This document shows, piece by piece, positions 3,271 to 40,670 of a stretch of DNA of 64,000 nucleotides. The translations under genes were made by a program, and so were the position numbers. This stretch comes from Glycera tridactyla (taxonomy: Eukaryota): contig OZ286474.1 in the NCBI GenBank assembly GCA_965644265.1, positions 78,058,001-78,122,000 of the forward strand, read 5' to 3'. Position 1 is the first letter of the stretch. Every line of letters starts with the position of its first letter. The notes below the pieces were generated by a model, which saw only the letters and a list, made by a program, of their open reading frames with translations, had not been told where the DNA came from and did no database searches.

Positions 3271-3989
3271 TGCTCTCAAAAATCTTCAGATAATCATGAA
3301 AGTCAACCAGCACTCAAAATGATCAGCATGCTTTCATTATGTGTCACATTCACCATGTTGCACTTTGCTTCTTGTTGTCACTGTATATGTTTTATATCTG
3401 GCCTTTTGATATGGAATACGTTTCTTGAGAGTACTATAAGGAATTGAAAAATTCTTCTCGCTTCAAAGAAGAGCGTACTTTCTAATACCGCATGTATAAC
3501 CCTAAATTGTCCATACGTTAAGGAGAATGTCTGATCTCCAAATGATTGATATAGGTGATCAAGATCAGCGTAGCTTGGAATACTTGCGAGGCTGTTCGGA
3601 AGAGGGTACATTCTCACTGACATATCATTATGGATGATTGTTTCGTCATCCATTTAGGAAGGCTTATCTAACCCCGTGACTTACGAATGATAAGTCTCTT
3701 CATCATCTGACATGCAAACAGACTTATGTCTTATCATCCGATCATATATCTAGCGTGTATGTGATCGCCACTTACCTTCCACGTTCGTTGCCGGCACATA
3801 TCCCGAGAACAGATTGCACATGTGGTTGTCTGAAGCTGGACTGAAATCTCTGGTCACGTGATGTGTTTGTGCCAACGCTATTGTGACATATAACAATCAT
3901 TCGCCATTGAGCGATCGAGGTCAAGGGTCAAATGTAGTGCTGTGACGTGAAGTTTGAAGTGACGTGCCTATCATACTTCGGAAGGCCTT

Positions 3990-10720: not shown

Positions 10721-13700
10721 ACCGACCGGTCATCCATAATGATCAGGTTCAAAAGGTTACTGTGGAAATGCTTGTCGGCAGTCACTCCACCAATGAAGGT
10801 CTTTGCAAGAAAGAAGAAATACATTAGATCACAACAGTTTGTTTTTATGTGTTTTATATTTGATTCATCTCGAATATAAAAATTCCAATCAGCGAGAGAT
10901 TGGAATTACCAACGTCGGCCTGCTGTCGGCAGCTGAAAAAAAGTTTTGCATGGGATTTATCGCCTGGTGGGTGTTTTCATGTGTTTTATTGTATATGGTG
11001 CTCTAATCCAACAGTGGAATAGTTCTCTGTAGTAGTATCGGTGTTGTATGTGAATGGAAGAAAAAAGTATTGAATGCTATATATCCCGCTCCTGCATTCT
11101 CTCATTCTCGTATTTTGGAGATCATTAGCACTCTCAGATCGCCATCTAGAGATCCATACAGCAACGTATTGGGATGTATATGACAATGATTGACTCTAAG
11201 TCACAATGTGCAGTTATTGATGTAGTACCCAACAAAGGAACAATCAAATACCACCACTGAGACCAAGTCTACCATCTTCACCACCACTTACACCACCTTT
11301 CACTTCGCCTCTCGACTCTTCTTTCACTTTTTTCTTTTTCCTCAACACCACTAATCCAACGGCAACAGCGATAACGGCAACACCGTGGGCATCAACTCAT
11401 AGTAGTCATCATCTACAGGGAGCTACGCGAGGTTTTATTCATATAGGGGTATCATAGGCACATCCTACCACACTCCATAGTATGATATCATATAACCGAT
11501 ATTGCATATATGTATATATGTTCAGAATAGTTCATATAATCATTTATCATTCAATTCATTGATGATAAATTATTTTTTCATTCATTTATGCATTTGTTTA
11601 TGTATTCATCTATTGTTTTTTTTCATCCATCGATTCTTCCATATATTCATTTTTTCATTGATTTCCTTATCCATTGATTCCTCCATTACACCTACACCTC
11701 CGTCATTTTCTGCTTCAGCCCCGGCACCACCCCCCCCCCCCCTCCCCTCCCCCCCCCCATCAACCCCGACACCAGCACCGATAATATGATAATGAGCACG
11801 AGCACAACCATTACCACAACCACCGGCACAAATACCAGTACCAAAACCAGGTATACCATCACACAAGTATTACCACGTCATCCTACCGCACAAACCACCA
11901 ACTCCAGGATCACACCAGTCGAAACCGTCGACATCGATACCCTAACAAATCATTTTCGTTCTCTCATTTCTAGTCATCGACTCCTCCCTGCCCCGACATA
12001 TTCGGTATTGCAGAGGGGAATCAAATTTCTTCACGATAATACAATACAACACAAAACTTTTCATGCAAAGGATTAGAAGAAGAGGCACTCGACAACAACT
12101 GGTCACATTAGGTGTTTTCGCAAACAAACGATGAAATACAAGAATATATGAGCGAATAAATTTCCGTGCAAATTAATTTCGTAGTTTCCTACATATACAC
12201 TTACAGAGCGTTTTTACCGCTGGAATAAAAAAAAACTAGACGTTGGCTTCCAGCATTGGTATATGCCTGACGGTGTGGAATTATTTATACTGAAATGAGT
12301 CATAGAAACGCCAGTCTCCCGTCTGAAGCCATGCATAAGTAAGTGGATTGAGCCTGAACGACGACAAGCCAGAACTACCCCATCTTATATTAACACTGTA
12401 TGTAGAATGATATACGTCTCGCTCGACAGATAATTCAATCTAACAAACGCTGGCCTCTGGCTCTCTCCAACACCACCTGGAGAAGAGTTTAAACTGGATT
12501 ATAAAGCAGACTGCTCACTCGTCTTTCTCCCATTGCTAACGTATNNNNNNNNNNNNNNNNNNNNNNNNNNNNNNNNNNNNNNNNNNNNNNNNNNNNNNNN
12601 NNNNNNNNNNNNNNNNNNNNNNNNNNNNNNNNNNNNNNNNNNNNNNNNNNNNNNNNNNNNNNNNNNNNNNNNNNNNNNNNNNNNNNNNNNNNNNNNNNNN
12701 NNNNNNNNNNNNNNNNNNAATGGATGAAAGTATTTTTTGAAAGTAAAGGATTGACAGAATTGAATTCACAGCAGATTAGAGATGTGTGGTCAAGGCCAAC
12801 ACTATTCTCAGAATCATCTGAACTTCTGATATTGATTCCTTTCTCACTTGTTAGCTAGATGAGCGATGTGGAACAGAATAGATTGAATTCACAACGTCGG
12901 GGTGAGGTAATTTCTCACCATCTTCATACGAGAAATAAGAAAGTAAGAAGTGCCTACACTTAGAATGCCGGGCGCACACAGATAAGCCGAGACATCGTAA
13001 GGCCCGGATATCGTGGTTACGCATATTCTTCAACAGAAACAGGTAACTGAAAAAGGGGAAGTCCTTTCGATCAATTTCACCAGGTACGACTTGTGACTAG
13101 ACTATAGCCAGTGGTGTGAGTTGTTCCAACATGGCAATCAAATGCCTCTAGTAACATCCCCAGCTTTGAAGAGCTATCTGAAATCTGTTGGATATTTTCA
13201 TACAGAATATGTTCAGTTTTCGTCAGTTACTGCAACGACCGCACTTAATCAGAAATTCCGACCTTGAGTTCTGTTAATATAACTAGTATTTCCGGTATAC
13301 TGCCACGGTTATCCATATTATCAGTATACTATCATTATGATCATTATTACCAGTACCATCTAAATCTTCAGTTTTACCAAAAACATCATTTTTTTCAGAT
13401 TTTCGTATCATCTGGATGATTTGGTTGCAGAGTTTCCTCTCCTTTTGAACTAGTATCACCATTATCAATATCCTTAGTATTTTCAGTATGATCGATAACA
13501 CTAGCATTATCAGTATCTAGAGTGAAGTTGAATGACCAGTGATATCAATTTCATCTGTATTACCAGTAGTATTAGTATTGCCATCATTATCAATATCATC
13601 ACACGTATCATCGGCATCACCGATGTCCTAAAGATAGGTTTGAATCATTCTAAACCATGTCTGTGTGATCTTGCATGCCAGATTGAAAAGGTTTATCTTG

Positions 13701-20304: not shown

Positions 20305-23300
20305 GTCGTACCTGGGGGCAGTTCTGTTGTGGTAGATCCTTAAGTAGCACGGACCGAAACGGGCGATATACCTTCAATCTTCAATGGAAAATTGTTCTCA
20401 TGTAGAGTGCAGTATCCCTGTGTTATCGCTGGAAAGGTTATGGCATACCATTTCATCGGCGTCGCTTCATTCCTGACATGCCTAGTAGTATAGGTATCCA
20501 GCGATGATATGGTTCTTTCATCTGGGAGGGCTACAATGAATAATCAAGCCCAATTTCAGACTTCATCCATGGTGTAAAATATAAATAGGATGGAGGAATA
20601 GCATTCATGGTGACCATCCTGAGAGATGGAGGAGGGAGGGGAAGACGGTGAATGACAGATGGCTGACTCCAGGGAATGGAGCATCACTCACTTCAGTCTG
20701 TCAAAAAGATGAATGGCCCTTCAATCTCGACATTGCTTGGGCCAGGTCCATTCCATTCGTGAGTCATCGGCAAATTCCTGACCTCAACGATTCTAAACTT
20801 TTGATCAGAATTTTGTTCAGAATCGAGAATCTCAACAAAACAATGACATTGTGTAATCGACAATATCTTTCGCATAACTTCGATTTTCTGAGATAATAGA
20901 TGGAAAGCCATGTTTTTCATTACATGATGATACATCATTGATATTCAAGCATATTCAGGTGTTCAATTCGATCTTGACAGAACTTCAAGGTACTGTATGA
21001 ATATAAGAATTTGCATGAAAAGCTAATTTGAACTTTCATCACCTCTCTGAATGAATTATGCTCGCTGCATGCCACTTTCGATACCATGCTAATTCGTTTC
21101 GAGATCATCGCATGAAATCATGATGACGTCTTCATGATTCTGATTATTTCCAAAATCATGAAGACGCAATCACTTGTATTGGTGTATTTCCATCCAATGT
21201 CAAATGAACTGACATTCCTGGTCGGGTCGTTCCATGGTTGTGATATCTGGGGGATTTTCGACTCAGTGTTGAATTCAGTGAGACAGTCAATTAGCGGACT
21301 ACTCACAATGTATGCTTTAGTTAGCCACTAGGTGAGCATCTCATAGTTCACGCTCAAATTAGGTATTAGATCAGGTGATTCCTCCAGATTGAGAGTGTGT
21401 TCAGAATAGTTGTGAGATCTATTTGTGATGTGCTTGAAAACCATATACAGAAGTCCAAACTTGTAAGGAGCCACACTTTAGAGAAATGTGTCCCCGATGA
21501 GTATTGCCACCTAATCTAGCACGTGTTGGAAATCAGGCGCAAGGGATGCTGGGTCGGTCTATTATTCATCCGTTCAACACTCTTGTGATTGAACATGAAA
21601 GGCGAGCCTCACGTGCTCACTGCATGTCCATGGGCCTTTTTTCAGGCGCGATAAGACCTGACTCTTCAAGGTTCCATAAGGGCATCATATTGATGGAGAT
21701 CAGATGTGACATCTCCTCCCCTTAGAGAGAAAAAAAACTATTGCTATACATGTCAAATATCAGACTTAGTCTTACCGAAATTATTGCTTGTGGATTTGCC
21801 TGTTTATTTGTNNNNNNNNNNNNNNNNNNNNNNNNNNNNNNNNNNNNNNNNNNNNNNNNNNNNNNNNNNNNNNNNNNNNNNNNNNNNNNNNNNNNNNNNN
21901 NNNNNNNNNNNNNNNNNNNNNNNNNNNNNNNNNNNNNNNNNNNNNNNNNNNNNNNNNNNNNNNNNNNNNNNNNNNNNNNNNNNNNNNNNNNNNNNNNNNN
22001 NNNNNNNNNNNNNNNNNNNNNNNNNNNNNNNNNNNNNNNNNNNNNNNNNNNNNNNNNNNNNNNNNNNNNNNNNNNNNNNNNTAAAAAACTCTATTTACCC
22101 TCGTACAAAAATATATACAAATGTGCATCCAGCCCAAACTTGGCTTTATCAATCACACATATGGCAACACGAACTCGATAACATACATACAATGTGCCAG
22201 CAATAGGTAATCAGTCAGAAGTAGTAGCTTTTTACTCGAGTATAGTCATATAGATTCAGGCTCTTATTCGTCATTCATGCTCTCTCACATTCTTCTGATT
22301 TTATTACTTTCAACATCATGGCATCATCATATGCAACAGTTGTCAGTCAATACGTGGTTGCTATGTCGCTTGGTATGAATAGAGCTGTATAAATAGAGCT
22401 ATATACAGGAAAAAACAGTCAGTCAGTCAATCTGTCTCTGTCACTTTCTCTGTCTCTCGTTTCTCTCTTTTTTCAGTTGCATTATTTTAATTCTTACTTC
22501 ATGTAGTTATCTTTCTCATCTCTCTCTATCGCCCTTTGGGAAAGTAAAGGTCGCACTGGTGAGGAACCCTTATGTAGTGAAGAGAAGACCGGATAAATAT
22601 AGACAGATGATTAGATGTGAGTGCCGCTGGTAGTCAGCCAATGTTTAATTCTATAGAGTTTAATCAGAAAAGGCAACATGGAGGCGGTGAGGCAGCGTGT
22701 CGAAAGTTTATCTTAGGTACGTGAGCGGCTTGCAGGCCCGTGAGCACAACTTTCGATGGCACTCAGTATGCATCATGTCGCTAGTCCTTCGACTTAACAA
22801 GATATGCACACAGAAATAAATCACCATGAGATGTCTGATCACTAAATGGGATGTTGATTCAATGCTGATCAAATAACAAGTGCTATAGCTCATGAGTTCA
22901 TACTCCAGCCTCCTGCATTCAATCAAGGAATGATGAACAAGCTCAGAGAAAGATTATTTGATTCGATTTGATTATGGGTTTTGTACAACTCACCAAGGTC
23001 ACATGAAATAACACCTATGTGTAGGAGGGATAGTTCTACTTTCTCCCTGATGACCAAGAACGGGGAGTATATCACAGCAATGGTTGACTTGTCTGCTAAA
23101 CTTACTTTGGAAATTTCGCACTCAATCGGCGTAATTTGGCCCAGTGCTATCGGTTACCGTTGAGTTCTGGTGCATCCGGGTCCTAATATTTTCATCGCAG
23201 CATGTTGCTGTTCCTGTTACAGCCCACGGGCGCTAGACTTTTGTAACTTCTAGGATACATCCAAATTGAACAATTTCTGGTATGCCATTTGGCGGGGAGC

Positions 23301-25329: not shown

Positions 25330-25463
25330 TACCAGCTCAGTGTAGTCGTTGTGGTAAAGATGGTATAAGGTATGATAGCAGTGGTGCTGTTAGTAGTAGT
25401 ACTGGTAGAAGCCTTGGTAAAAGTAGTACTAGTGAACGTGAGAGTGGTAGTAGAAGTAGTAGT
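25330..25463. repeat. Degenerate (GTA)n array
   Basis: Directly visible; abuts the LINE 3' tail. Confidence 0.85.
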
Positions 25464-25962
25464 AAAAAACAGTAAAACAGTAAAACAGTAAAACAGTAGT
25501 TTATTTCCGTGACAAGCACAATACAAACGACAAATACAAACATTCATTAAACGTATTCCAACATCTGGTCAGTATAATTGTAGATGAAGTAGTATATACA
25601 TGCCCGCCCCACATGCGGGGCTATTTGTCACTGGTATAGGAAAAAAGTTCTTATGGTTGTCGTCACTTGCCTTCCAATGATATTGGTAATGGTTGAATAC
25701 CATTATCAAAGAATGGGTTACAAAAAGGTGATCTCCTCGGATCCACTCGCGTACGATAGTACGTTTGGTTTTGGTGTTGATAGAAATAACTAATGGTAAT
25801 AGTAATAGAGGTGTACAATGAAAAATAGTACGTCAACTTCGTTTGTTAACGTGTTCGCCTGTGTGTGCACTAGCGTATCTGTGGTTACTTCTCAGTATAG
25901 CAGGGTCACACATACGTTATTATAGTAGAGTTCACATTCTCAGTATACATAGGTTGGATTGT

Positions 25963-28900
25963 TCAGTTGTACATTAAAGCTTTCCTACGATCCATCATTT
26001 TGCTGATATGGTAGGCGGTGATTTTCACTAGTTTGGCTTAATAACATGTTAACACAGTTTGGGTCTTCACTCGACAATTCTGGTTCAATTTGATGTATCT
26101 CTCTCCACATGTCTTCTCTCTCATTCTTCAGACTTTCACAGTGTAACAAAAAGTGCATTTCGTCTTCTACTTGCCCAGCGGGGCATATCTGGCATACTCG
26201 TTCATCAACTGGAATACCCTTGAAGCGACCTGTCTCTATGAGTAGCGGAAGCACCCCACATTTAAACTTAATGATCGTACTTCTTGCTTGTCTGTCCAAA
26301 TTCTGGGATACAATTACTTTGTTCTGTTCCGTATTGTGAATTTTGACGAAAGTTCTTAGTTTGGGTTTGCTTATTGCTTCATTCCATAGATGTTCTTTTC
26401 TAAGCCTCAATAGTCTCGCTTCAAGGATTTCCAGGTCATACACTCTCCATGTTTCCTTGTTGTTACACAAGTTACAAACATGTAAGATATGCTTGATTTC
26501 TGAGGCCCAGCAATCTTTCGATAACCATCTCTCCCACTTGTACATGATGACAGGTAATCTATTTGGGTCCATTTTAATTATACGGTTGTGCAATCTAATC
26601 ATTTCCACCCATCTAGTATCCCTGGCATCTAGCCAACCCATCTCAATTTGGGTGGCACACACTGGCGTGAATTTATGTACCCCGAGATAGAATCTTTGAA
26701 CCCTGTTCTGGAGCACCCTGGGTTCTTGGTAGTCTTTAAAACCCCAAACCCCACTGCCATAATTCTGTATGGGGAGAACGTAGGTGTTGAATAGTGTGTG
26801 GTAGCTGGCATTGCCCATGTTCTTCATGTTTTTGAACAGCGATACTACCCGTCCAAATGATCTGGTAGCGGCAGTTGTGAGTGTCTCTATGGCGTGTTTG
26901 AATGAGCAGTGTTCGTGGAAATGTACACCCAGGTATTTATAAATGCTCACATATTCAAGGTTGTGATTACAGCATTTCAAGACAGTAGAGGAGGGGGGCG
27001 TTGGTGCTTTCTCACATGTAGAACTTGACTTTTTTTCTGATTGATAGACATCTTCCATTTCTGACACCATTTCGTCATAGTATTTAATTGTTGTTGTGCT
27101 TGTTCAACAGTATTTGATATAAGCACGATGTCATCAGCATAAAGTAGTAAACCAATTTGGGTTCCACCCACCATCACCCCAGCTTGGAGATCATTTATCA
27201 TGGGCACAAGGTCATTGATATAGGTTGCGAATAAGAGGGGACTCAATGAATCGCCCTGTCTGACTCCAGATGTGATGGGGAACCAGCCCGTTAACCGTCC
27301 TTCCAACTGTACACAGCTGAGAGGGTGCTCATATATTTTCTTAATGGCATTGAGGATGGGTCCGTTGATGTTGTTATTGAGTAGCTTGTGGAATAGTAAT
27401 TCATGGGTAACATAATCGAAGGCCTTCGAGAAATCAATAAAGGTTAGAAAGGTTTCTTGTTTCATCTCAATTCTATTTTTGCAAATGCAGTGTAGGGTGT
27501 ATATATGGTCTAGACATGATCTTTTACTGCGGAAGCCATTCTGTTCATTAGCCAGTAAATTGTTATCTTCCATGTATTTGGACAGACGACTGGATATGGC
27601 AGCTGGGTACAGTTTACTTGCTACAGTTAACAGGCTGATCCCCCTGTAATTCAGTGGGACCCTGGGGTCTGCAGTTCTGCATTTGGGGATTGGGCTTATG
27701 ACACCATAAGACCAAGCGCTCGGTAGAACCTTATTAAACATACATGCATTGAATAATTCGGAGAGTAAAGTGATAGACAGTTCATTTTTGAAGATCTCAG
27801 CAGGCAGACCGTCTATACCTGAAGCTTTACCTGATTTTGCCTTCATAACAATTTTCTCAACTTCTTCAAAAGTGAATCTCTCATTGATCGCTTGGTTGTA
27901 TTGGCCATCTGCATCGTACATCTCACATAGCTTATCATTTTGTACTTTGACATTCATTTCAAAGGCAATTTGATCAGGGTCCGTACAAGGTGGTGGTGTC
28001 AACAGTGAATGAAACTCATGTTTCCATTTATTCAGAACAGTTTCGATATTGCTGGTAATCTCACCCTCATCGTCGTATACCTCTATGGGTAATTTGGTAG
28101 ACTTCCTGGGGCCCAGTTTCAAGATCTGATTCCAGAATTCCGTAGGGTTAGAGGTGTTAGCCTTTTCCAATTCAAAAACCCGATTTCGGTTATATTTCCG
28201 TTTATGCTGTTTTAATGTTTTATCAAACTTACTCTGGGCGTCCAAGAAGTCTTTTCTGGCATTCATCAATGTAGGTCCATTCCTTTTGGATTTGAGATAG
28301 ATTCTCTCCATTGCATGCATGTTATCCCACAACTCTTGTAAATCATCACACCAATAAGGGAACGGTTTGTGTTTGTACCTTTTTGCCGAGCTTGGAGCGT
28401 TACTAACCTTTTTCCAATGATGGGACATTATACCATGGTAGTATTCACAAACATTGTCATATATGCAGTCTATTCTTTCTTGATTCATATTCTCGGATGT
28501 GATATCGTCAATGTACTTCAGGATTTGTTCTGCATTCTCGGTGCTTAGTAAATGTGTAGGGAGAGGTTTCCTTCTATATCGTACAGGTGGGCTGGAATAT
28601 TTCCCTTTATTCCGGCTAGCATTCGTCGCTCCATCTGTGCGGTCAGTTTGTGAACTAGTGTTTTCTTCCACTGCCGTCTCAGGGTCAGCAGGTCGAAGCC
28701 GGACTCGCGCCATGAGAAGGGCGTGGTCCGATATCTTTCCTGCGCATTCACCTATACAACCTGTTTCTTCCATCATTTCAGAGGGTGTAATGATCTTGAA
28801 GTATTTGATAGATTTGACAATATCATGTGGGACAATCATGTAATCCACTACAGCCTTTCCTTTGTGGCTTATAGAGGTAAAATTATCATTCAATGGGAAA

Positions 28901-29514
28901 ACTCGTCCGTTCACAATACATGTATTTGATTGTACCAGAAAGTTGATAAGTGATGTACCTTGATCATTCACCATTTCATCTATTACCACTCTTTCTGGTA
29001 TATCATCAACTCCGTCCAGGTAATCGAGTTTTTTCCCCACCCTGGCATTGAAATCCCCACCCACCACCGTGAGGTCATCTTCTTCACATGCATACAGAGC
29101 TGTTGTCAAATACTCAAAGACACCCTCAGAACCTGTAGCGTGAACGCTATTCTCCGGAGGGAGATAGACTCCCATTACTGAGATGGTTTGGTATGACTGC
29201 TTGTTTGTGAAATGAATACGTATTATACCCTCAATGTCATCGTCAACTCTGCTGATCAGGTACTCATTATACACTCTTTTGTGAACCAAAATTGCTACTC
29301 CCCCTGATCCTCTAGCACTTTTTCTGTTGTTAGATTTCCTGCAGTGGATAAACGTATGATACATATCAACAACAATAGATTCATTGGGTTTCGTCCAGGT
29401 TTCACAGATAATATAGACATCAGCATCGTAATGATGCAACACCCTCTCTTTGAAGCATTCATTCGCTCCCCTCCAGCCATTTGAGTTCCATGTGCAAATT
29501 GTCAGATTCGTCAT
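25963..29514 (-). pseudogene. LINE ORF2 (APE endonuclease - reverse transcriptase - Cys/His domain), frameshifted
   Basis: ORF 29514-26977 has APE motifs WNSNG, ICETW, GGVAIL, YLPP, GDFNAR, VVDY and RT motifs KASGIDG, YRGISLL, QNGFR, FIDFSKAFD, GVRQGDSLSPLLF, LLYADD. It continues in ORF 27070-25985 (YKYLG...CQIC...HFLLHC) after a 1-bp indel in the G6 run at 26993-26998. A probable second shift near 26035 gives the end LVKITAYHISKMMDRRKALMYN* at 25963. Confidence 0.92.
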
Positions 29515-29535
29515 GCTAGGTGAATCAGGAAACCC

Positions 29536-29946
29536 CTAATAGTTACTGGAGCGTAGGCTATTCTTTCTACTATCATGCTGCGGTGAGTGTCTTCCTCTCT
29601 CAGATCGACTTGGTTGGCGCCCGGAGCGGCCTCTTCCTTGGCCTCTACGTTCAACTTCGTTCCACGGTTGGTAGTCATCGCGGTCGAATCCGGTGTCTTC
29701 ATCGTCTGTTCGGTTCTGCTCATGCTGGCTTCGGTTAGGTCCGTCTTGTTTACCTCCACTGTCTCTCCTATTATCGCTCACTTCGAGATTACGTGTTCCT
29801 GATCCGGGCCTGCCTCCTTCATCCACCGCCCCGGTGTCGCGCCTATCGTGACTGCGATTATTTCGTTTCTCCAAGTCTGATTTTGCGAGGATGACTCCAT
29901 TTGCTGTGACTATAAGGCGTTTCTCACTATCTACCAGTTTCAGCAC
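29536..29946 (-). CDS. C-terminal fragment of LINE ORF1 (R/G/D-rich, 5'-truncated)
   Basis: 136-aa open frame ending about 20 bp upstream of the ORF2 ATG in the same orientation. Basic, low-complexity tail as in LINE ORF1 proteins. It starts abruptly at the (CTA)n array. Confidence 0.65.
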   Translation of the reverse strand: MLKLVDSEKRLIVTANGVILAKSDLEKRNNRSHDRRDTGAVDEGGRPGSGTRNLEVSDNRRDSGGKQDGPNRSQHEQNRTDDEDTGFDRDDYQPWNEVERRGQGRGRSGRQPSRSERGRHSPQHDSRKNSLRSSNY

Positions 29947-29980
<34 letters not shown>

Positions 29981-30007
29981 TCAGTTGTAGCAACATCAGT
30001 AGTAGAA

Positions 30008-30059
<52 letters not shown>

Positions 30060-30440
30060 TATGATAGTGGTAGCAGTGGTAGTAGTGGTAGTGGTGTTAG
30101 TAGTAGTAGTACTAGTAGTAATACCAGTAGCAGTAGTGATAATGGTGGAAGTGATGGTAGTGGTAGAGGTAGCATCTGAACTCAAATTAGGAGCAGTGGT
30201 ATCAATAGTGGTTGTAGCACTCGTAGTAATACCATTGGATGTTGTAGCAGTGCTGGTGTTAGCAGGAGTGGTTGAAGTAGCATTTAAATCGTTAAAATAA
30301 TGGTGGAACCATCCTCGATAGTTTTTATGGTGGTGGTGGTCGAGGAAGTAGTGATTGTTGTATCGGTTGTAGTGTGAGTAGCAGTGGTGGTGGTGATGAT
30401 TCTTGTGTGATGCAATCGCATTGATTGCAGTATTTTGGTA
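29947..30440. repeat. (GTA)n microsatellite core (29947-30060) with degenerate triplet flank
   Basis: Directly visible; abuts the LINE 5' truncation point. Confidence 0.95.
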
Positions 30441-38100: not shown

Positions 38101-40670
38101 CAGTCATTGAATTATTACAGCCTTTAAGATCATTATTGTACACAGAAAACGAGTGATGACGCTGTGTAATAGAGATCATGAATGCAGATGACGAGAATGA
38201 TACCTTGCATTCCTATGGAATCCATAACTCTTCACCTCTCGTTGTGAGTTCATTACATGGGTATATCAATACGAGGGGTGTATAATTACCAAACAAGCAA
38301 CCACGAAATATGGATGCAGACTTGCAATACGTAAAGCACAATATCAAAAAAACAAGAGTTTCATTCGAATAGTAATAATGTATGGATGGATACAGTACGA
38401 TATATTCTGCCAGAGGTGAGTGTCTCACTAAGCTAAGAAATACAACACGAGCCTATTCATGGTGAATATTGGAGTCACTCAAGGGATGCGTTTCAAGATT
38501 CATTATGTTCTATCTGGTAGTTGCAATATACTGAGGGTAACAGCTTTCAGAAAGATCTCAATGAAGGGCTTTGTTCACGATGACATCTACTCACATATCA
38601 GATCCAGAGGCTTATATGTCGACTCCACGCTGATTTCATGTCGGGGTAGTGTCCCCTGTGTTTGATGGAGGTCATTTTGGCCTAATGCACAATAGGCATC
38701 TTTCACTAAGGCGTCTCGAAGGGGTTGCCTTATCTCTATTTCAACCTTCATGAGACCCGACCTGGACATATTTAGTATGGAATCACTTTGAAGCTGATCC
38801 TGAAACTGGTATGATGATTGTCCTTCGTGGTTATCTCTTGATATGATCCCGTAACTGGATCGAAATGTACTCAATAAGAGACGTGAGTGGGGATCACCCC
38901 ATCTTCAATTTCGGGTACCACGGCGCCCTTACATCGATTGCAGTTGCCTGTGTGCAGTAGTAATGAAACCAAAGGTGCCAACTCAAAAGTTTCTAATATA
39001 TTGCTGGGAGATGCGGAGGAGGCAGATCCCTCTAGGGCAAACCACCCGGGAGATGCAGGTGTTAAAAGGTGTCTTGGGATGTGTATGGTTGAATGGGAGC
39101 GCTGGCTGGCGGTAATGGCCAATCGAGTGCATTGTCTTTCATTCAATCACGGCGCTAACAGATTGTCTAGAAGAGTTAGAAAGCTTAGAGCCTCTCCTAA
39201 TGAGCTATTCACCACCTGCAAATCACTTACCTCTTTAAATAAAAGACGCGCCTAATGACTAGACCACAATCGATGGCAACAACGACGGCCAGGACTTCAG
39301 ATATAGCCAACACCAACCCTGCGACGGACTCCATGTTGGATTTCTGTCCACCAGCAAATAGATGTGTGAACATGTGAACACTAGATTTCCATGGCGAGCA
39401 TGATGACAACGATTATGTTGATAATNNNNNNNNNNNNNNNNNNNNNNNNNNNNNNNNNNNNNNNNNNNNNNNNNNNNNNNNNNNNNNNNNNNNNNNNNNN
39501 NNNNNNNNNNNNNNNNNNNNNNNNNNNNNNNNNNNNNNNNNNNNNNNNNNNNNNNNNNNNNNNNNNNNNNNNNNNNNNNNNNNCTGAAGAAGTGCAAGCT
39601 TGAGTCAAGTGTAGTGGAGAGGCAATCTCTCTGGTGGCTCCCTAGGTGCCCGGGTAAGCTTGACAAGGGGGCTGACAAGCTGTCATATTTGTATGCATTA
39701 TAGACGAGTTGATCGCATTATTTGTCATGCCGATTTCAGGCGCATACACGCCAGTCAGCTGCTGCCAGCTCCGCCCAACCGCACCAATACATCTCACCAA
39801 TCAACCAACACACACTGACCAAATACCGCTTTGCTGTCTTGACTCCTACATAACCTAAGTTCAATGAAAAGATCCCCCTCTCGGCCTAGGATATTATCCA
39901 TTCGATCTGTTGTTTCAGTATCCTTCACTTGGAGACTAAGAAGCTCTTTCCCATGGATTGAATCTACCCTGTTATATATTCACGACAATTACTAGGCTTG
40001 TGACTGGGAAAGTACACTGATTGATCAGAGCTGTGTCCTCTCATCTCGCTCGTACACTGATTAATATTGTTGAAACGTCGATGATAGACAGATAAATAGA
40101 CAGACAGACATACAGGTAGGTGGATGAATGGATGGATAGCTAGCTAGCAAAAAGCCACTGCAGCAGCATCGGTGGTACCACAACCATCACTATCGACAAT
40201 GACGATATTGAGACACCCACCACTTTCGCCGTCTCTGATATCACCACTACCTCCACTAACATCCAACGCAAAACCACCAAAAGCACTACCACAACCAAAG
40301 GTATGATGTTTACCATCACCAACACAACTATGATCACCATAATTACCACCATCACCACCACCACCGCCACCGCCACCAATTCCACGGCCATATGCAATTT
40401 CGCTACTACCATTACTACATCAACTGCCTCATTAGATACATCACCATGAATAGCATCTCCACCATTAAATCCATCTTCATCATCACCAGCATCACTACCA
40501 TCACTTTGCCAAAGCCGAAATTACATGAACAGCTTGCCTCAACAGAGCAAGATCAACTGCGATTGCACTGATGTTAGCACTATGTTTGAATGACAGCTTA
40601 TTCGAATTTCGAATTTTACTAATGTTTTGTGTGGAACAAACAGGTCCGTGCATCTGAGATTAGGCTAGGG

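What the first reader, a model, noticed from the sequence alone, without database searches (positions are those of the whole stretch)
25330..30060. Candidate (CTA)n-microsatellite-targeting LINE with an APE endonuclease (RTEX-like)
Seen: (CTA)n (element sense) lies at both ends. It follows the 3' tail and also directly abuts the 5' truncation point inside ORF1. A tail made by reverse transcription explains only the 3' side, so a 5' flank at an arbitrary truncation point implies insertion into a pre-existing (CTA)n array. Established: microsatellite-specific LINEs exist in other clades (Dong/R4 in TAA repeats, Waldo/R1 in AC repeats, Tx1-clade Kibi/Koshi). Inference: this may be a CTA-specific lineage in an RTE/RTEX-like clade. 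I do not know whether it is already described.
Basis: partly seen in the sequence, partly recalled or inferred. Interest (0 to 1): 0.75.

Follow-up and report, generated by a model that had tools for sequence, protein, structure and literature searches.

The report
LINE family that inserts into (ACT)n microsatellites
A young jumping gene (a LINE retrotransposon) in this animal genome lands almost only inside ACT-trinucleotide repeats and always in the same orientation, which adds a new repeat target to the few known microsatellite-specific LINEs.

Summary
The window copy lies on the minus strand at 25466-29946. It is a 5'-truncated LINE with an APE endonuclease, a reverse transcriptase and one frameshift.

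Its real 3' tail is four copies of ACTGTTTT, not (CTA)n. The ACT/CTA repeat lies outside the element on both sides.

- **Copies:** 15 genomic copies at 88% identity or more have 15 different 5' ends (two full length, 13 truncated). All 15 abut ACT repeats on the sense strand, and all 15 tails run in phase into ACTACT.
- **Pre-existing target:** in one copy (L033) both flanks carry the same complex higher-order repeat, so the array was there before the insertion.
- **Other lineages:** a diverged member in this window (60446-60980) and two lineages about 50% identical in protein at another locus sit in ACT repeats too. One metagenome relative also has its 5' end against an ACT array.
- **Exceptions:** three relatives from other sources (35-57% identical) end in unique DNA.

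The RTE/RTEX assignment could not be tested. RTE proper is unlikely, because there is a real ORF1.

(ACT)n is not among the LINE targets listed in the papers I could search. I file this as a new member of a known kind.

Other first readers flagged similar (ACT)n/(CTA)n LINEs elsewhere in this genome.

The parts
29947..30137 (-). 5' flanking target repeat: (ACT)n on the element's sense strand, (AGT)n on the + strand. It abuts the 5' truncation point.
   Evidence: pure runs of 11, 17 and 4 units. A degenerate ACT-like repeat continues to about 30440.
29536..29946 (-). Remnant of ORF1 (C-terminal part, about 136 codons). The copy is truncated at position 871 of the full-length element.
   Evidence: No Pfam family. 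Full-length ORF1 in L030 is 290 aa with an N-terminal coiled coil.
26977..29514 (-). ORF2, first piece (845 codons): APE endonuclease plus reverse transcriptase.
28723..29496 (-). APE-type endonuclease domain (residues 7-264 of the ORF2 piece).
   Evidence: Pfam PF03372, E 5.4e-09.
27016..27654 (-). Reverse transcriptase domain (residues 621-833 of the ORF2 piece).
   Evidence: Pfam PF00078, E 2.3e-38. PDB matches to L1 ORF2p and R2 reverse transcriptases at about 1e-24.
26985..27005 (-). Single frameshift that splits ORF2 in this copy: a 1-nt length difference from copy L030 near 26993, in a homopolymer run.
25985..27070 (-). ORF2, second piece (361 codons): C-terminal domain with a CX2CX9HX4C Cys/His motif.
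   Evidence: The motif aligns with the same motif in outgroup P0052.
25499..25984 (-). 3' UTR (486 bp). It holds a conserved GTGAC box (25627-25631), an adjacent GC-rich hairpin, a terminal GTCAC box (25509-25513) and an AATAAA-like signal just before the tail.
   Evidence: The two boxes can pair, and their flanking pairs covary across lineages.
25466..25498 (-). The element's own 3' tail, four ACTGTTTT units ((AAAACAGT)n on the + strand).
   Evidence: 4.1 copies, 100%. Other copies carry 2-6 units.
25330..25465 (-). 3' flanking target repeat: a degenerate (ACT)n that starts in phase (ACTACTACT...) right after the tail.
60446..60980 (-). Second, diverged, heavily 5'-truncated family member (about 390 bp). 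Its tail is two ACAGTTTT units, with (ACT)25 after the tail and (ACT)n before the 5' end.
   Evidence: First noted as earlier finding s1-328266.

Best explanation
This is a copy of a young, low-copy LINE family. The full-length element is about 5.3 kb. ORF1 has a coiled coil. ORF2 has an APE endonuclease, a reverse transcriptase and a C-terminal Cys/His motif. The 3' UTR is structured and ends in an (ACTGTTTT)n tail.

Shown: both junctions of essentially every copy lie in ACT repeats. The repeat always reads ACT on the element's sense strand. The tail always joins the repeat in the same phase (...GTTTT|ACTACT). The 5' ends differ from copy to copy. At least one target was a pre-existing complex repeat array.

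Inferred mechanism: the endonuclease nicks the (AGT)n bottom strand. The freed ...AGT-3' end pairs with an ACU at the start of a tail unit, or with read-through (ACU)n. Reverse transcription starts there (target-primed reverse transcription), which explains the variable number of 8-mer units. It often stops early. The cDNA end is then joined to the upstream half of the same array, often using a few bases of ACT-like microhomology.

Not resolved: whether specificity comes mainly from the endonuclease, from RNA-target pairing, or from both.
For: - The element has APE and RT domains.
- The genome holds 56 matches to the 3' end motif and none to the reversed control. Copies are 95-98% identical to the window copy at the 3' end.
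- All roughly 20 3' ends have 2-6 ACTGTTTT units followed directly by ACT repeats.
- Fifteen copies at 88% identity or more have 5' ends at positions 1, 5, 46, 788, 871, 1001, 1662, 1747, 2237, 2253, 2550, 3699, 3794, 3804 and 4340 of the full-length copy. All 15 abut ACT-phase repeats on the sense strand, with a median array of about 60 bp and a maximum of 258 bp.
- In 15 of 15 copies the tail runs in phase into ACTA.
- In L033 the same distinctive higher-order repeat unit lies on both sides. A copy's own flanks resemble each other more than flanks of different copies do (Jaccard 0.064 against 0.046, permutation p about 0.017).
- ACT arrays are rare in the background: 0.32% of the window, all at the two members. 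There are four other array loci in about 87 kb of surveyed flanks, two of them showing no LINE tail in the 45-bp flanks printed.
- Diverged lineages share the habit. The window's second member has an ACAGTTTT tail. At L034 three elements are stacked: a member 51% identical in protein, and a (CACGTCTT)n-tailed lineage 46-59% identical, each bounded by ACT repeats.
- A 5'-truncated metagenome relative starts right after an (ACT)14 run.
- 5' junctions show 0-5 nt of microhomology. Two independent copies (L031, L043) appear to stop at the same internal CTACT site, allowing for a 10-nt shift in the L043 alignment.
Against: - No empty (uninterrupted) site was seen, because no sequencing runs were listed.
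- Three of the 15 5' flanks have another LINE's 3' tail just upstream of the ACT array (L031, L034, L029). Some targets may therefore be arrays that came with earlier insertions.
- In this window every ACT array is next to a family member, so elements may also create arrays.
- Three relatives from other sources end in unique DNA after their tails: L059 at 57% identity, L052 at 45% and L058 at 35%. The trait is not universal in the wider lineage.
- Three older copies have only one or two ACT units after the tail.
- No biochemical evidence exists for endonuclease specificity.
Confidence: 0.85

Rival explanations
1. Self-nesting only. The ACT repeat is made by the element's own reverse transcriptase as an extension of its tail, and new copies insert into the tails of older copies. 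The family would then target its own by-product, not genomic microsatellites.
For: Three of 15 5' flanks carry another LINE's tail immediately upstream of the ACT array. Three elements are stacked at L034. All ACT arrays in the window are next to family members. A distant relative (L072, 27% identical) appears to use (ACT)5 as its own tail.
Against: The other 12 5' arrays showed no LINE tail in the flank read: those examined closely are bounded upstream by unique DNA or by other microsatellites such as (ATC)n. L033 splits a complex higher-order repeat that a tail extension would not produce. Two of the four array loci surveyed show no LINE tail in their printed 45-bp flanks. Relatives elsewhere go straight from tail to unique DNA.
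Confidence: 0.08
2. Only a weak site preference. The element nicks at a short ACT/AGT-containing site, and the repeats on both sides grew afterwards by slippage from duplicated target bases.
For: Three older copies have only 1-2 ACT units after the tail (L013, L018, L027). Three 5' junctions have only 2-5 units (L034, L043, L036).
Against: The youngest copies (95-98% identical) have the longest arrays and the oldest have the shortest. That is the opposite of growth after insertion. The L033 flanks share complex structure. Arrays reach 258 bp at a copy 97% identical to the full-length copy L030.
Confidence: 0.05
3. Assembly artefact or passive accumulation. The junctions are mis-joins across microsatellites, or copies merely survive better in repeat-rich, low-recombination DNA.
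For: Microsatellites are hard to assemble, and no reads could be laid on the junctions. Passive accumulation near CA repeats has been proposed for Drosophila Waldo-A and Waldo-B (PMC3812793).
Against: Fifteen loci on 11 different contigs show the same base-precise, in-phase and strand-specific junctions. Passive accumulation predicts neither exact abutment at both ends nor a fixed orientation.
Confidence: 0.02

Closest known systems
Waldo and Mino (R1 clade; targets (ACAY)n and (AC)n) and Kibi and Koshi (Tx1 clade; targets (TC)n and (TTC)n): microsatellite-specific APE-type LINEs (PMC3812793, citing Kojima and Fujiwara 2003 and 2004)
   Same: An APE endonuclease plus RT element whose copies are flanked on both sides by one microsatellite in a fixed orientation, with variable 5' truncation.
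   Different: The target is (ACT)n, which is not in the lists I could read. No gag-like CCHC ORF1 was found. From memory only, that type of ORF1 is the R1-clade pattern. The tail is an 8-nt tandem repeat preceded by a structured 3' UTR. The nearest outgroups have esterase-type ORF1s. Clade membership was not tested by RT phylogeny.
Dong (R4 clade; (TAA)n), Togen (NeSL-related; (TG)n) and some HERO families: microsatellite-specific LINEs with a restriction-like endonuclease (PMC4640811, PMC3812793)
   Same: Trinucleotide or dinucleotide microsatellites serve as dedicated insertion sites.
   Different: Those elements carry a restriction-like endonuclease downstream of the RT. This one has an N-terminal APE endonuclease.
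CR1/L2-type 'stringent' LINEs (for example chicken CR1, eel UnaL2). Their features are recalled from my own knowledge and were not checked in papers here.
   Same: A 3' end made of short tandem repeats instead of poly(A), preceded by a conserved 3' UTR stem that the RT is thought to recognise. The variable unit number fits slippage during priming.
   Different: Those families are not known to me as restricted to one microsatellite. This lineage's ORF1 has no esterase or PHD domain. Membership was not tested.
RTE / RTEX clades
   Same: APE plus RT. RTEX, unlike RTE, has substantial ORF1s, and some carry an esterase (PMC3905857), as do this lineage's nearest outgroups.
   Different: RTE proper has rudimentary ORF1s or none (PMC3905857), whereas this element has an ORF1 of about 290 aa. 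No RT phylogeny against reference sets was possible.

Membership tests
Microsatellite-specific APE-type LINE (functional kind) | Encodes an APE endonuclease and a reverse transcriptase | tested here: met
   Pfam PF03372 at 5.4e-09 and PF00078 at 2.3e-38.
Microsatellite-specific APE-type LINE (functional kind) | Most copies have the same microsatellite at both the 5' and 3' junctions, despite different 5' truncation points | tested here: met
   15 of 15 copies with 15 different 5' ends. Also the second window member and two further lineages at L034.
Microsatellite-specific APE-type LINE (functional kind) | Fixed orientation of the element relative to the repeat strand | tested here: met
   ACT is on the sense strand in all 15 main-family copies, in the second window member, in two other elements at L034 and in the metagenome relative L136.
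Microsatellite-specific APE-type LINE (functional kind) | The target existed before insertion (empty sites, or one array split in two) | tested here: inconclusive
   The L033 flanks share one higher-order repeat, and own-versus-other flank similarity gives p about 0.017. No true empty site could be examined, because no runs were listed.
Microsatellite-specific APE-type LINE (functional kind) | The endonuclease nicks the repeat sequence specifically | not testable with these tools
   Needs an in vitro nicking assay.
RTE clade | ORF1 absent or rudimentary (PMC3905857) | tested here: not met
   The full-length copy L030 has a 290-aa ORF1 with a coiled coil. Relatives have ORF1s of 248-385 aa.
RTE / RTEX clades | The RT domain groups with reference RTE or RTEX sequences in a phylogeny | not testable with these tools
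   No Repbase or Dfam reference proteins were available. Database hits are unnamed. PDB reverse transcriptases from L1 and R2 are equally distant.
RTEX / CR1-group | Esterase (SGNH/GDSL) domain in ORF1 of some members (PMC3905857) | tested here: inconclusive
   This lineage's ORF1 has no esterase. The nearest outgroups, P0050 and P0052, have neighbouring ORF1s with weak GDSL-lipase hits.
R1 clade (Waldo, Mino) | ORF1 with gag-like CCHC zinc knuckles (from my own knowledge) | tested here: not met
   ORF1 gave no zinc-knuckle family in Pfam even at E up to 1.
CR1/L2-type stringent LINE | 3' end of short tandem repeats plus a conserved 3' UTR stem | tested here: met
   The tail is (ACTGTTTT)2-6. 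The GTGAC and GTCAC boxes pair, and flanking pairs covary across lineages (L059 read by eye). This is a resemblance in how it works, not proof of clade membership.

The most novel reading that the evidence does not exclude
This would be the first microsatellite-dedicated LINE lineage outside the R1 and Tx1 clades among APE-type elements, sitting in a CR1/L2- or RTEX-like group with tandem-repeat tails. Specificity would come largely from pairing between the RNA's ACU-initiated tail and the nicked (AGT)n strand rather than from the endonuclease alone. The lineage would both use and spread (ACT)n arrays, so it would shape this genome's trinucleotide-repeat landscape, and several diverged lineages would compete for the same arrays.
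Probability: 0.25. Interest if true: 0.7.

Novelty: new member of a known kind. Interest (0 to 1): 0.5.

Why it matters
Target-specific LINEs show how a selfish element limits damage to its host. They are also being developed as site-specific insertion tools, as recent R2 work shows.

Only a handful of microsatellite targets are listed for LINEs in the papers I could read: ACAY, AC, TC, TTC, TAA and TG. A family specific for (ACT)n would add a new target. It has strict orientation and phase, young copies, and sister lineages with different tail units. It may also add a new clade context.

The family offers a natural series for asking whether the endonuclease or RNA-target pairing sets LINE specificity. 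It would also help explain where ACT-type microsatellites in this genome come from, and why they are interrupted.

Tried and rejected
- **Reads:** The look-up of sequencing runs listed no run, so read laying could not be used. Neither the junctions nor empty alleles were checked.
- **Clade assignment:** unnamed database hits, the protein atlas and the PDB gave no clade. The paper that defined RTEX is not held.
- **Idea that the flanks are a Thr-rich coding exon:** rejected. The repeat changes frame through indels, and there is no long ORF.
- **Whole-3'-UTR consensus folding:** few compensatory pairs within the close subfamilies. Only the GTGAC/GTCAC helix gained support across distant lineages.
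- **First metagenome scan with a single protein:** nothing found. The second scan, with an alignment, gave 80 loci.
- **Literature:** searches for an ACT/CTA/TAC-specific non-LTR element found nothing. That shows absence from the held library, not from Repbase or Dfam.
Full report
**1. What is in the window**

The element lies on the minus strand. In its own sense direction it reads as follows:

- It starts at 29946 with the last 136 or so codons of ORF1.
- ORF2 follows at 29514-26977, with an APE endonuclease (PF03372, 5.4e-09) and a reverse transcriptase (PF00078, 2.3e-38).
- One frameshift near 26993 splits ORF2.
- The C-terminal part of ORF2 follows at 27070-25985. It carries a CX2CX9HX4C motif.
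- A 486-bp 3' UTR ends in an AATAAA-like signal.
- The tail is four ACTGTTTT units at 25498-25466.

On the + strand, (AGT)n at 29947-30137 touches the 5' end. A degenerate ACT-type repeat at 25465-25330 follows the tail.

The tail made by reverse transcription is the 8-mer repeat, and the ACT/CTA repeat lies outside the element on both sides.

**2. The family in this genome**

The window is part of a 2.04-Gb, 207-contig assembly.

- The 3' end motif occurs 56 times within two mismatches. The reversed control occurs 0 times.
- Seven copies are 95-100% identical to the window copy over the 3' end, and others range down to 74%.
- Only two copies reach the common 5' end and a third starts 46 bp in.
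- Full length is about 5.3 kb (L030). ORF1 is 290 aa, with a coiled coil and no Pfam family, zinc knuckle or esterase.
- Every copy examined has its own lesions.

**3.

I fetched 19 whole copies with flanks.

- **3' ends.** All 3' ends have 2-6 ACTGTTTT units followed directly by ACT repeats. In the 15 copies at 88% identity or more, the flank begins in phase with ACTA in 15 of 15.
- **5' ends.** Those 15 copies have 15 different 5' ends: positions 1, 5, 46, 788, 871 (this window), 1001, 1662, 1747, 2237, 2253, 2550, 3699, 3794, 3804 and 4340.
- **5' flanks.** All 15 abut ACT-phase repeats on the sense strand. Twelve have arrays of 30-258 bp and three have 2-5 units.
- **Background.** ACT-class arrays cover 0.32% of the window, all at the two family members there. 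About 87 kb of other flanking DNA holds only four further array loci.

Chance cannot produce this pattern, and the constant orientation rules out mere proximity.

**4. Were the arrays there first?**

- In L033 both flanks carry the same distinctive higher-order unit, about 40 nt of ACT, ATC and ACC triplets ending in ACTTCC. The insertion sits in the pure ACT run of one unit.
- Across copies, a copy's own two flanks share more non-pure 6-mers than flanks of different copies (0.064 against 0.046, permutation p about 0.017).
- Several 5' arrays grade upstream into other microsatellites, such as (ATC)n, or into unique DNA.
- Young copies have long arrays and the oldest have the shortest. That argues against repeats growing after insertion.
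- No true empty site could be examined.

**5. Other lineages**

- **Second window member.** The element at 60446-60980 has two ACAGTTTT tail units, (ACT)25 after the tail and ACT repeats before its 5' end.
- **Stack at L034.** Three elements are stacked in ACT repeats: a member 51% identical in protein, a (CACGTCTT)n-tailed lineage 46-59% identical, and the main family.
- **Tree.** These lineages form a well-supported clade (SH-aLRT 100) with the metagenome proteins P0001 and P0002.
- **Outside this genome, for the habit.** A 5'-truncated relative (L136) begins right after an (ACT)14 run.
- **Outside this genome, against.** L059 (57% identical, CAAGTTTT tail), L052 (45%, CATGTTTT tail) and L058 (35%, TCGTA tail) pass from the tail into unique DNA.

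The habit is therefore shared by several old lineages here but is not universal in the wider group.

**6. Mechanism**

The following points are shown:

- The ACT repeat is strand-specific at both junctions.
- The tail-to-repeat junction is always in the same phase.
- The number of 8-mer units varies, as does the length of the T run.
- 5' junctions show 0-5 nt of ACT-like microhomology. L031 and L043 appear to stop at the same internal CTACT site, allowing for a 10-nt shift in the L043 alignment.

The mechanism itself is inferred. The endonuclease nicks the (AGT)n strand. The ...AGT-3' end pairs with the ACU that opens a tail unit, or with read-through (ACU)n. Target-primed reverse transcription proceeds from there. 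The 5' end is then joined to the upstream half of the array.

The 3' UTR has a GTGAC box next to a GC-rich hairpin, and a GTCAC box just before the AATAAA signal. The two boxes can pair. The pairs flanking them covary among lineages 35-57% identical (C-G, A-T and T-A in turn, and L059 and L064 by eye). This suggests an RT-recognition structure like those of 'stringent' LINEs. Whether the endonuclease or RNA pairing sets the specificity is open.

**7. Comparison with known families**

- **Known targets.** The papers I could read list these LINE microsatellite targets: (ACAY)n, (AC)n, (TC)n, (TTC)n, (TAA)n, (TG)n and some HERO families (PMC3812793, PMC4640811).
- **Literature search.** Searches for an ACT/CTA/TAC-specific element found nothing. 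Repbase and Dfam could not be consulted.
- **RTE and RTEX.** RTE proper is unlikely, because it lacks a real ORF1 (PMC3905857). RTEX and a CR1/L2-type group both remain possible, since the nearest outgroups have esterase-type ORF1s.
- **No phylogeny.** No reference phylogeny could be run.

**8. Earlier notes of this scan**

First readers flagged the window's second member (s1-328266) and similar (ACT)n/(CTA)n LINEs on other pieces of this genome (s1-347602, s1-318354). I tested the first directly and saw the same kind of stacking at a different locus. None of these notes had a follow-up.

**9. Limits**

- No reads were available.
- No further genome fetches were possible.
- The clade is unresolved.
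- The census rests on 15 main-family copies plus five other elements.

**Verdict:** this is a real, strongly supported (ACT)n-specific LINE family. It is a new member of a known kind.

Noticed in passing
window 60446-60980 (minus strand): A second, diverged and heavily 5'-truncated member of the same lineage. Its tail is two ACAGTTTT units. (ACT)25 follows the tail and ACT repeats precede the 5' end.
   Followed up: yes
window 25509-25513 and 25627-25631; also L048, L052, L057, L058, L059, L064: A conserved 3' UTR architecture. A GTGAC box next to a GC-rich hairpin can pair with a GTCAC box just before the AATAAA signal and the tail. The base pairs flanking the invariant cores covary among lineages only 35-57% identical in protein. 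It may be the RT recognition structure.
   Followed up: partly
L034:1-7700: Three related LINE lineages are stacked head to tail in ACT repeats: a 51%-identical member, a (CACGTCTT)n-tailed lineage and the main family. This suggests repeated use of the same arrays. L031 and L029 also have another LINE tail just upstream of the 5' array.
   Followed up: partly
L072:5060-5100 (metagenome contig RCNA010001482.1): A distant relative (27% identical) seems to end in AATAAACCAT followed by (ACT)5 and then unique DNA, so ACT repeats may be its own tail. This could hint at how the target and the tail are related.
   Followed up: no
L048, L050, L051, L052, L054, L055, L057, L058, L059, L064: Tail units differ between related lineages: CACTGTTTT, ACAA, CTGT, CATGTTTT, a 12-mer, ATTCT, ATAC, TCGTA, CAAGTTTT and GTCATT. 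An AATAAA-like signal just before the tail is seen in the lineages whose 3' ends I inspected.
   Followed up: no
window 12545-12718, 21812-22081, 39426-39583, 52144-52490, 53312-53806, 55104-55685, 58909-59045: Nine runs of N (1,925 bases in all).
   Followed up: no
L031:1180-1218 and 3649-3786 (element-sense coordinates): (AGT)n arrays in the opposite orientation, with no LINE tail in the 45-bp flanks printed. They may be unoccupied targets.
   Followed up: no
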